From Octopus bimaculoides (Eukaryota): a DNA stretch of 49,528 bases. Under the pieces are notes generated by a model. That model was not told where the DNA came from. It made no database searches and saw only the letters and a program-made list of their open reading frames with translations. Every line of letters starts with the position of its first letter. Within the stretch, counting starts at the first letter, position 1. Location: NCBI RefSeq assembly GCF_001194135.2, contig NC_068998.1:28600098-28649625 (forward strand), given 5' to 3'. Below are positions 43,830 through 43,921 of the stretch, piece by piece. A program made the position numbers and the translations under genes.

Positions 43830-43921
43830 ATGGCCCAACCAAAAATGCCTCTACGGACAGCAATGTTATCAGTGCCAGGTAACGAGTCCTTGAGTGCCCG
43901 AAGAAGACATTCCTGGATTTG
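43830..43921 (+). CDS. PDE4: Isoform-specific N-terminal coding exon of cAMP-specific phosphodiesterase 4 (dunce), long-form type
   Basis: ATG GCC CAA...AGA AGA CAT TCC TGG ATT TG|gtaagt encodes MAQPKMPLRTAMLSVPGNESLSARRRHSWI+TG (phase 2), with an in-frame TAA at 43812-43814. RRHSWIC followed by FDV(D/E)NG is the N-terminus of vertebrate PDE4D3 (MMHVNNFPFRRHSWIC) and PDE4B4. The downstream common exon is not in this window, so the assignment rests on one motif plus splice phase. Confidence 0.75.

What the first reader, a model, noticed from the sequence alone, without database searches (positions are those of the whole stretch)
43830..43921. Hidden PDE4/dunce first exon carrying the vertebrate-type RRHSWIC PKA motif
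Seen: a 30-codon frame, too short for the ORF track, with an upstream in-frame stop, ending RRRHSWI-TG at a GTAAGT donor. Established: PDE4D3 and PDE4B4 begin with exons ending RRHSWI|C that splice in phase 2 onto the common FDV(D/E)NG/UCR1 exon. The serine is a PKA site (Ser13 in PDE4D3, linked to mAKAP binding), and dunce is the classic learning gene. Inference: this PKA-regulated N-terminus is shared between cephalopods and vertebrates and may be ancestral. The MAQ...LSVP start also weakly resembles PDE4D5 (MAQQTSPDTLTVP).
Basis: partly seen in the sequence, partly recalled or inferred. Interest (0 to 1): 0.75.

Follow-up and report, generated by a model that had tools for sequence, protein, structure and literature searches.

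The report
Conserved PDE4 alternative first coding exon
The short reading frame is a real and intact alternative 5' coding exon of a PDE4 (dunce-type) cAMP phosphodiesterase gene. The same exon is already present in PDE4 gene models of clams, snails, beetles, copepods, amphioxus and vertebrates, so it is an ordinary member of an old exon family and not a new kind of thing.

Summary
Window 43830-43921 (+) reads ATG plus 30 codons, MAQPKMPLRTAMLSVPGNESLSARRRHSWI, then TG, followed by a GTAAGT donor at 43922. An in-frame TAA lies at 43812. Chance expectation for RRHSWI+TG|GTRAGT is about 2e-8 per window.

A profile of 32 PDE4 N-termini of this type, built without the window, hits the six-frame window only here (E=1.8e-7). 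RefSeq PDE4 isoforms of Biomphalaria, Mytilus, Mercenaria, Mya, Pecten and Babylonia begin M(M)L(S/T)VP…RRRHSWIC and continue directly into FDVENG/UCR1. Beetles, bugs, a wasp, a copepod and amphioxus show the same junction.

A bivalve-like mRNA matches the window up to 43921 and then continues T-TTT-GAT-GTG. A polar-bear PDE4B-like gene ends its first exon RRHSWI-TG|GTAGGT, and the next exon starts C-TTT-GAT-GTG. Intron position and phase are therefore shared.

Not shown:
- the downstream FDVENG exon is outside the window
- the source organism could not be checked
- the start codon is ambiguous (orthologues start at the equivalent of M12, 43863)
- phosphorylation is inferred from the R-R-x-S-hydrophobic consensus
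- the PDE4D5 resemblance is not supported

Verdict: real, ordinary, a new member of a known exon family. Interest is modest.

The parts
43830..43921 (+). Longest coding reading of the exon: first in-frame ATG, 30 codons (MAQPKMPLRTAMLSVPGNESLSARRRHSWI) plus the first two bases (TG) of a split Cys codon.
   Evidence: The N-terminus profile hit covers 43815-43922 at 28.8 bits, E=1.8e-7, and is the only hit in the window.
43863..43921 (+). Conserved core from the third in-frame ATG (M12): MLSVPGNESLSARRRHSWI(C). It corresponds end to end with the complete N-terminus of mollusc D3-type PDE4 isoforms (18-24 residues in most, 29 in one Babylonia isoform) and of vertebrate PDE4D3/4B-type isoforms. 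This is the likely ancestral start codon.
   Evidence: 65% identity to Biomphalaria isoform X8, E=1e-6. One search shows that the GCAATGTT start context is shared with the bivalve-like mRNA. One search gives the alignment with vertebrates (ML.V…RRHSWIC).
43866..43877 (+). L-S-V-P, an instance of the L.[VIL]P motif that lies upstream of the basic core in this exon family.
   Evidence: 24 of 25 invertebrate/amphioxus N-termini, which were selected only on the RRHSW core, carry this motif. Chance of finding it in a random 16-residue window of this sequence is 1.7%. On its own the motif is too short to be significant across the window (rank 6, E=2).
43899..43916 (+). R-R-R-H-S-W, a PKA consensus (R-R-x-S-hydrophobic). 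The serine codon TCC is at 43911-43913. It is Ser28 counted from M1 and Ser17 counted from M12. It is positionally equivalent to Ser13 of PDE4D3.
   Evidence: The function of the vertebrate site is taken from PMC7770493. Phosphorylation here is inferred and was not tested.
43922..43927 (+). 5' splice donor GTAAGT, placed after the second base of the Cys codon (a phase-2 intron).
   Evidence: Identity to the bivalve-like mRNA stops exactly at 43921|43922. Ursus PDE4B-like exon 1 ends RRHSWI-TG|GTAGGT. The residue before FDVxNG in 305 distinct junctions is always one that an NNY codon can encode.
43812..43814 (+). In-frame TAA, 16 bases upstream of the first ATG.
   Evidence: It closes the frame only if it is part of the transcript; see the possible acceptor below.
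43785..43815 (+). Pyrimidine-rich tract (ctccccctccccaacccctgatttct) ending in AAG. This is a possible 3' splice acceptor, which would make the exon the second exon of the transcript while still being the first coding exon. Uncertain.
   Evidence: Read from the sequence only. No RNA evidence is available.

Best explanation
This is an alternative 5' coding exon of a PDE4 (dunce-family) cAMP phosphodiesterase gene. It is the orthologue of the exon that gives PDE4D3, and the PDE4B isoform beginning MLHV…RRHSWIC, their N-termini.

Proposed mechanism:
- Transcription starts at a promoter of its own somewhere upstream. That promoter has not been located.
- Translation starts at one of three in-frame ATGs. 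43863 is the one homologous to the start codon of the orthologues.
- The exon ends after the second base of a Cys codon, and the GTAAGT donor at 43922 is used.
- The intron is longer than 5.6 kb and runs out of the window.
- The exon is joined to the common exon that begins Y-TTY-GAY-GTN-GAR-AAY-GG. This gives …RRRHSWIC-FDVENG, followed by UCR1, UCR2 and the catalytic domain, i.e. a 'long' PDE4 isoform.

The N-terminal tail of 20-31 residues carries a conserved L.VP motif and an R-R-x-S-W PKA consensus. By analogy with PDE4D3 Ser13, PKA phosphorylation of this serine would alter a protein-protein interaction or the targeting of this isoform. This would be part of a cAMP-PKA-PDE4 negative feedback, alongside the activating UCR1 site (RRESF).

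Shown: the exon, its frame, its donor, its homology and the shared intron phase. Inferred: the splice partner, which start codon is used, the promoter, phosphorylation and its effect.
For: - Exact anatomy of the exon.
- Far beyond chance.
- A profile of 32 D3-type N-termini built without the window hits only 43815-43922, at E=1.8e-7; the next best hit scores 6.3 bits.
- BLASTP to Biomphalaria glabrata PDE4 isoform X8 (XP_055885172.1, 687 aa with UCR1, UCR2 and catalytic domain): 13/20 identical, E=1e-6.
- The same N-terminus lies directly before FDVENG in Mytilus, Mercenaria, Mya, Mizuhopecten, Pecten and Babylonia (two loci). It is also there in five beetles, two hemipterans, a wasp, a copepod, amphioxus and a Tara metatranscript, and in birds, a bear and teleosts.
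- The bivalve-like mRNA L001 has an upstream in-frame stop. It shares AGAAGACATTCCTGGATTTG with the window and diverges exactly at 43921|43922 into T-TTT-GAT-GTG.
- In Ursus genomic L002, exon 1 ends RRHSWI-TG|GTAGGT. A 64-kb intron follows, and the next exon starts AAG|C-TTT-GAT-GTG-GAG-AAT-GGG.
- In 305 distinct junctions the residue before FDVxNG is only ever S, C, R, G, N, L, H, I, D, T, F, P, A or Y. All are NNY codons; K, E, Q, M and W never occur.
Against: - No FDVENG, UCR1 or catalytic exon lies in the 5.6 kb downstream or anywhere else in the window, so the splice partner is not seen.
- No transcript or protein with exactly this exon was found. One search returned none among cluster representatives of about 470-1050 aa, and one search was null. 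The searches cannot see isoforms hidden inside 90% clusters, and no cephalopod entry was retrieved.
- The 11 residues upstream of M12 have no counterpart in the orthologues.
- A possible acceptor at 43815 leaves open whether this is the first exon of the transcript.
- The orthologue set was picked with a pattern that includes RRHSW, so only the L.VP motif, the adjacency to FDVENG and the intron phase are independent evidence.
Confidence: 0.85

Rival explanations
1. The exon is real and belongs to PDE4, but it is not the first exon of the transcript. One or more 5' UTR exons, or further coding exons, lie upstream and splice into an acceptor at about 43815/43816. The in-frame TAA at 43812 would then be intronic.
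For: A pyrimidine tract followed by AAG lies immediately before 43816. In insects the homologous region is preceded by 20-40 further residues, e.g. MMSGELRVPELRLGPPEGGSQLLVPPSP… in Tribolium madens.
Against: Eight mollusc isoforms and amphioxus start within a few residues of the L.VP motif. The bivalve-like mRNA has an in-frame stop 11 codons upstream of its ATG. AAG is a weak acceptor. With a coding upstream exon, the frame would have to enter with a split codon xAG.
Confidence: 0.25
2. It is an orphan or duplicated copy of the PDE4 exon (a pseudo-exon) that is no longer spliced into a PDE4 mRNA.
For: No other PDE4 exon lies in 49.5 kb. The window is full of repeats, transposon fragments and assembly gaps. 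Some molluscs have two PDE4 loci, each with such an exon (Babylonia).
Against: The frame, all three ATGs, the RRxS site and a consensus GTAAGT donor are intact, and the core codons match those of a bivalve-like mRNA. It is not a processed copy, because intron sequence follows the TG. First introns of tens of kb are normal for this gene (64 kb in Ursus), so an isolated exon is what one expects.
Confidence: 0.07
3. It is a chance open frame in AT-rich non-coding DNA that happens to resemble PDE4D3.
For: Only 30 codons. No Pfam or PDB hit for the peptide alone.
Against: Expected 1.8e-8 per window for the motif plus phase plus donor. Profile E=1.8e-7. The extra L.VP motif is also present. Nucleotide identity to the bivalve-like mRNA ends exactly at the donor.
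Confidence: 0.01

Closest known systems
Mollusc PDE4 'D3-type' isoforms in RefSeq, e.g. Biomphalaria glabrata isoform X8 (XP_055885172.1), Mytilus galloprovincialis X10 (XP_076086878.1), Mercenaria mercenaria X9 (XP_045160364.2), Mya arenaria X11, Mizuhopecten yessoensis X6, Pecten maximus X4, Babylonia areolata X4
   Same: The N-terminus is M(M)L(S/T)VP-x(5-12)-(R)RRHSW(I/V)C directly joined to FDVENG/UCR1. It is 65% identical to Biomphalaria over 20 residues. The start-codon context and core codons match a bivalve-like mRNA.
   Different: The window's frame stays open 11 codons further upstream (MAQPKMPLRTA), with two extra in-frame ATGs. The linker between VP and RRR differs in length and sequence. 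The rest of the protein is not in the window.
Mammalian PDE4D3 (MMHVNNFPFRRHSWIC|FDVDNG; Ser13) and the PDE4B isoform beginning MLHVSDLLLPRRHSWIC|FDVENG
   Same: RRHSWIC end, the M-[LM]-x-V start, and an overall length of 16-20 residues. The intron position and phase are identical (TG|GT…AG|Y-TTY-GAY) and the PKA consensus is the same.
   Different: No proline after the valine in vertebrates. There are three arginines here instead of two. The known partner of phospho-Ser13, mAKAP/AKAP6, is to my knowledge a vertebrate protein (not checked here), so the partner in a mollusc would have to be another protein.
Arthropod dunce/PDE4 isoforms with …LLVP(P/T)S…PRRRHSWIC(S/G)|FDVENG (Tribolium, Sitophilus, Leptinotarsa, Dendroctonus, Cylas, Bemisia, Clastoptera, Microctonus, Lepeophtheirus)
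   Same: The L.VP motif, the RRRHSW(I/M)C core and the adjacency to FDVENG.
   Different: Arthropods have one extra residue (S or G) between C and F, and a longer N-terminal extension. No Drosophila entry among the hits retrieved carries this N-terminus. They carry NRRHTLANVR|, ARRRTTGS|, SDSDLFG| or NSPSS| instead.

Membership tests
PDE4 D3/B4-type alternative 5' exon | Encoded peptide ends R-R-H-S-W-(I/V)-C | tested here: met
   RRRHSWI plus TG. The Cys is completed by a pyrimidine from the next exon, as in Ursus (C) and the bivalve-like mRNA (T).
PDE4 D3/B4-type alternative 5' exon | Exon ends after the second base of the last codon, followed by a GT donor (phase-2 intron at the same position) | tested here: met
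   The window has TG|GTAAGT and Ursus has TG|GTAGGT. The junction-residue spectrum of 305 N-termini is compatible only with NNY codons.
PDE4 D3/B4-type alternative 5' exon | Spliced onto the common exon encoding FDV(D/E)NG, the start of UCR1 | not testable with these tools
   No FDV[DE]NG or UCR1 sequence occurs in any frame of the window. The window ends 5.6 kb after the donor, and no RNA data or flanking scaffold is available.
PDE4 D3/B4-type alternative 5' exon | Lies upstream of PDE4 UCR2 and catalytic exons on the same strand | not testable with these tools
   Outside the window. Look-ups of window ORFs to find the source record were all null.
PDE4 D3/B4-type alternative 5' exon | Similarity upstream of the basic core (M-L-x-V-(P) start, L.[VIL]P motif) | tested here: met
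   MLSVP is present. The motif occurs in 24 of 25 invertebrate/amphioxus members, with a 1.7% chance expectation. The whole-exon profile gives E=1.8e-7.
PDE4 D3/B4-type alternative 5' exon | Contains the start codon (first coding exon) | tested here: inconclusive
   There are three in-frame ATGs and an upstream TAA, and orthologues start at the M12 equivalent. A possible acceptor at 43815 leaves the transcript structure open.
PKA substrate site equivalent to PDE4D3 Ser13 | R-R-x-S-hydrophobic consensus at the homologous position | tested here: met
   R25-R26-H27-S28-W29, aligned with the vertebrate RRHSW.
PKA substrate site equivalent to PDE4D3 Ser13 | Actually phosphorylated by PKA, with a change in partner binding | not testable with these tools
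   Needs biochemistry. The vertebrate precedent is cited from PMC7770493.
PDE4D5-type N-terminus (MAQQTSPDTLTVP…RRFTVAHTC) | Alignable similarity to a D5-type N-terminal region | tested here: not met
   BLASTP of the 31-residue peptide against P0122 (MAQQAASPDTLAVPEV…RRFTVAHTC|FDVDNG) gave no local alignment at E<=100. The invertebrate counterpart of the D5/B3 exon is the …NRRHTLANVR| type, which is absent from the window.

The most novel reading that the evidence does not exclude
The module M-L-x-V-P…R-R-R-H-S-W-I-C is a regulatory or targeting tail older than the protostome-deuterostome split. It is kept, together with its intron phase, in molluscs, arthropods, amphioxus and vertebrates. Its ancestral function would then be something more general than mAKAP binding, such as a PKA-switched interaction with a still unknown conserved partner or with PDE4's own UCR modules.

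At least two other PDE4 N-terminal exon families are equally old: RRHTLANVR ≈ RRFTVAHTC, and RRSWP ≈ MSWPSSF. Together this would overturn the published view that long-form N-termini arose by drift within vertebrates (PMC2929239). It would also make isoform-specific PDE4 feedback testable in mollusc learning models.
Probability: 0.45. Interest if true: 0.5.

Novelty: new member of a known kind. Interest (0 to 1): 0.3.

Why it matters
For annotating this genome, it pins a 92-base coding exon, with its frame, phase and donor, that ORF-based tracks miss. It also marks the window as the 5' region of a PDE4 gene.

More broadly, the PKA-site-bearing N-terminus of PDE4D3 is not a mammalian invention. 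It is a bilaterian exon with a conserved intron phase. The one evolutionary study I could read (Johnson et al. 2010, PMC2929239) concluded the opposite. That study found conservation of the D3-type N-terminus 'primarily in mammals' and attributed the N-terminal exons to sequence drift.

The exon is already present in many automatic gene models, so the point is modest. It does give a handle on isoform-specific cAMP feedback in molluscs used for learning research.

Tried and rejected
- **Short queries.** The 40-residue composite found no candidates. This null is not informative, because the tool in practice returns only proteins of about 0.78-1.75 times the query length (all hits to the 128-aa query were 100-224 aa).
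- **Padding workaround.** Padding the query with X to 600 residues solved the length problem.
- **Pfam and PDB with the bare peptide.** Nothing found; the peptide is too short.
- **Literature search for 'RRHSW'.** Irrelevant hits only.
- **Other PDE4 5' exon types or any UCR/catalytic exon in the window.** None found. A 17-residue match to the catalytic motif KSQVGFIDYIVHPLWET at 3883-3933 (-) has E about 0.4, lies in a short stop-flanked frame among microsatellites, and was rejected as chance. An unfiltered tblastn gave only poly-His/microsatellite noise.
- **Identifying the source record or organism through exact look-ups of window ORFs.** All null.
- **Genomic loci for a wasp and an amphioxus isoform.** Not on record.
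- **Bacterial promoter/terminator scan.** Not meaningful for a eukaryote.
- **L.VP motif alone as a window-wide detector.** Too short: rank 6, E=2.
- **PDE4D5 resemblance.** Rejected.
- **One phmmer run.** Timed out and was replaced by tblastn.

Full report
**1. The observation**

The coordinates are exact. Window 43830-43919 (+) translates to MAQPKMPLRTAMLSVPGNESLSARRRHSWI. Bases 43920-43921 are TG and 43922-43927 are GTAAGT. Reading through gives Trp then a stop, so the frame is only 31 codons long. An in-frame TAA sits at 43812-43814.

RRHSW occurs once in the six frames of the window, and FDV[DE]NG does not occur at all.

With a first-order Markov model of the window's own composition, the expected counts are:

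| Pattern | Expected per window |
|---|---|
| RRHSWI | 4e-4 |
| RRHSWI followed by TG\|GT | 1.9e-6 |
| RRHSWI followed by TG\|GTRAGT | 1.8e-8 |

The last figure is about 0.001 occurrences in a 2.7-Gb genome (an assumed size). The feature is not chance.

The window itself is AT-rich eukaryotic DNA. It has many microsatellites, transposon fragments and 1,150 N in assembly gaps.

**2. How the comparison set was obtained**

The bare peptide is too short for Pfam or PDB. That null is an artefact. The tool in practice returns only proteins of about 0.78-1.75 times the query length; all hits to the 128-aa query were 100-224 aa.

Three searches then gave the data.

- It returned vertebrate PDE4 fragments.
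- A profile of these fragments plus the window peptide was run against 1.84 billion representatives. It brought in invertebrate fragments.
- The query was the window peptide plus the UCR1 of an Elysia fragment (P0210), padded with X to 600 residues. It returned full-length PDE4 proteins of 617-1049 aa from molluscs, arthropods and amphioxus.

Cluster look-ups supplied names and further isoforms.

**3. What the vertebrate data show**

- PDE4D3-type proteins read (M)MHVNNFPFRRHSWIC|FDVDNG.
- PDE4B-type proteins read MLHVSDLLLPRRHSWIC|FDVENG or MLNVNAACSRRHSWIC|FDVENG.
- Teleosts read …YRRHSWVC|FDVENG.

[quoted passage not shown] 2004). It also states that Ser54 phosphorylation enhances catalytic activity (Sette and Conti 1996).

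**4. What the invertebrate data show**

The same N-terminus, directly joined to FDVENG/UCR1, is common in public gene models.

| Group | Species or source | N-terminus before FDVENG |
|---|---|---|
| Mollusc | Biomphalaria glabrata X8 | MMSLTVPGDVGTSNERRRHSWIC |
| Mollusc | Mytilus galloprovincialis X10 | MLTVPTIQEPKRRHSWIC |
| Mollusc | Mercenaria X9 | MMATLLVPTDLKQGERRRHSWVC |
| Mollusc | Mya X11 | MMATLLQIPTIVRPGERRRHSWVC |
| Mollusc | Mizuhopecten X6, Pecten X4 | MVMLSLP(I/A)SDLTACG(S/N)RRRHSWIC |
| Mollusc | Babylonia (first locus) | MVSLAVPSSNSLLVPGNSGPGQRRHSWVC |
| Mollusc | Babylonia (second locus) | MMALTVPSANVHGQRRHSWVC |
| Cephalochordate | Amphioxus | MVPIQGSHGCVRRRHSWIC |
| Insects | Five beetles, two hemipterans, a wasp | …LLVP(P/T)S…PRRRHSWIC(S/G) |
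| Crustacean | Copepod | YLQVPEQGLPRRRHSWMCG |
| Unknown | Tara Oceans metatranscript | YLQVPTTTTRRRHSWICG |

The mollusc rows come, and the others. The window reads AMLSVPGNESLSARRRHSWI(C).

BLASTP of the window peptide against the full-length Biomphalaria isoform gives 13/20 identities, E=1e-6. That isoform is 687 aa and has UCR1, UCR2 and the catalytic domain.

A profile built from 32 such N-termini without the window finds the six-frame window only at 43815-43922. It scores 28.8 bits, E=1.8e-7 over 3,335 fragments, and the next best hit scores 6.3 bits.

The comparison set was selected with a pattern containing RRHSW, so the core itself is not independent evidence. The L.[VIL]P motif upstream of the core is independent. 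It is present in 24 of 25 invertebrate/amphioxus members and in the window. Its chance expectation is 1.7% in a random 16-residue stretch of this DNA. Alone it is too short to find the exon (rank 6, E=2).

**5. Exon boundary and phase**

Three lines of evidence agree.

- **The bivalve-like mRNA.** A contig of 2,456 bases (ENA ERZ27229299, P0253/L001) has an in-frame stop 11 codons upstream of its ATG. It shares GCAATGTT at the start codon with the window's third ATG. It also shares AGAAGACATTCCTGGATTTG at the end. It diverges from the window exactly at 43921|43922: the mRNA goes on T-TTT-GAT-GTG-GAG-AAT-GGC where the window has GTAAGT.
- **The polar-bear gene.** In the Ursus maritimus PDE4B-like gene (L002), exon 1 ends …RRHSWI-TG|GTAGGT. 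It even gives the same read-through W-stop. After 64 kb the next exon starts …TTAAG|C-TTT-GAT-GTG-GAG-AAT-GGG.
- **The junction residues.** Across 305 distinct N-terminal junctions, the residue before FDVxNG is only S, C, R, G, N, L, H, I, D, T, F, P, A or Y. All are NNY codons. K, E, Q, M and W never occur. This is what a split codon completed by a pyrimidine of the common exon predicts.

TG at 43920-43921 would therefore be completed to Cys.

**6. What remains open**

- **Splice partner.** No other PDE4 exon of any type is in the window. The intron is longer than 5.6 kb, and 64 kb in the bear shows that this is normal.
- **Start codon.** Orthologues start at the equivalent of M12 (43863; -3 G). 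The window also has in-frame ATGs at 43830 (-3 T, +4 G) and 43845 (-3 A). Which are used depends on the transcription start.
- **Transcript structure.** A pyrimidine tract plus AAG ending at 43815 could be an acceptor. The exon may therefore be the first coding exon but not the first exon of the transcript.
- **Source organism.** I could not identify it. The peptide is closest to molluscs, which fits a cephalopod but does not prove it.
- **Annotation status.** I could not tell whether the exon is annotated in its source genome. No cluster representative carried it, but isoforms are hidden inside 90% clusters, and no cephalopod entry reached the top 120.
- **Phosphorylation.** It is inferred from the R-R-x-S-W consensus only.

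**7. The PDE4D5 side remark**

This is not supported. There is no alignment to a D5-type N-terminus. The LSVP it leaned on is the L.VP motif of the D3-type exon. The invertebrate counterpart of the D5/B3 exon (…RRFTVAHTC|) is the …NRRHTLANVR| type seen in flies, aphids, Limulus and molluscs. That type is not in the window.

**8. Comparison with what is known, and novelty**

The thing works like, and by all testable criteria is, a member of the PDE4 D3/B4-type alternative 5' exon family. Two defining features could not be tested: splicing to UCR1, and location in a PDE4 gene.

It is a new member of a known kind. The exon type is already in RefSeq models of many invertebrates.

The only evolutionary analysis I could read (Johnson et al. 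2010, PMC2929239) sampled vertebrates plus Ciona. It concluded that D3-type conservation is 'primarily in mammals' and that N-terminal exons arose by drift. The data here contradict that for at least the D3-type exon, and apparently also for the D5/B3 and D4/A4 types. I found no paper stating this, but my access to the literature is partial.

mAKAP/AKAP6 is, to my knowledge (not checked here), a vertebrate protein. If so, the conserved function of the serine must be something else, and that is the only really open question.

**9. Verdict**

The finding is ordinary in kind. Interest is 0.3.

Noticed in passing
related proteins; not in the window: At least two other PDE4 long-form N-terminal exon families look as old as the D3 type. 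Vertebrate …QRRFTVAHTC| (D5/B3) matches …NRRHTLANVR| in Drosophila, aphid, Limulus, Mytilus, Haliotis, Biomphalaria and Babylonia, and QPRRHTMHC| in amphioxus. Vertebrate …KSRMSWPSSF…| (D4/A4) matches …RRSWP(S/T/V)…| in Mercenaria, Mya, Liolophura, Babylonia and Lepidoptera. This contradicts the drift-in-vertebrates view of PMC2929239.
   Followed up: partly
related proteins: A mollusc-wide N-terminus MA(A/F)MYKKFKKMV(I/N)PRRR(R/K)K…S|FDVENG occurs in Lymnaea, Biomphalaria, Haliotis and Babylonia, with close variants in Mercenaria, Mya, scallops and a chiton. It is hydrophobic plus basic, so it is probably a membrane-targeting tail. It is not present in the window.
   Followed up: no
window 35862-36020 (-): A full-length match to the 5.8S rRNA model at 43.8 bits, just above the gathering score of 42 (E=6.6e-8). 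It is isolated from any other rRNA hit, so it is probably a decayed rDNA fragment or pseudogene.
   Followed up: no
window 43595-43685 and 44008-44202: An imperfect (CTG)n array of about 30 units ends 145 bases upstream of the first ATG of the exon. A (TC)n/24-mer array of about 190 bases starts 87 bases into the intron. Either could lie in the 5' UTR/promoter or affect splicing. Untested.
   Followed up: no
window 7604-7945 (+), 31343-31669 (+), 12206-12580 (+), 20810-21280 (-): Transposon debris. Two Tc1/mariner-like transposase fragments (…DNAPSYTHTAKV…LNSIEHLWDEIQR, and an HTH-like piece). Two reverse-transcriptase/LINE-like fragments. They were recognised by eye only.
   Followed up: no
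window 12641-13186 (-), 29409-29786 (-), also 13074-13115 and 29611-29715: Two long minus-strand ORFs share a repeated peptide unit (…SQS..TGN..AQM..FTCH…, and VQEPVRRH on another frame). This points to copies of one interspersed or tandem repeat family at about 13 kb and about 29.5 kb.
   Followed up: no
window ~11.3-11.9 kb, ~13.4-13.8 kb, ~45.1 kb, ~47.7 kb: Runs of N (1,150 in all) flanked by microsatellites. These are assembly gaps, so distances across them are not reliable.
   Followed up: no
tool behaviour: the search for homologous proteins returned only proteins within about 0.78-1.75 times the query length. Padding a short query with X residues retrieves full-length proteins. Nulls from short queries should not be read as absence.
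   Followed up: yes
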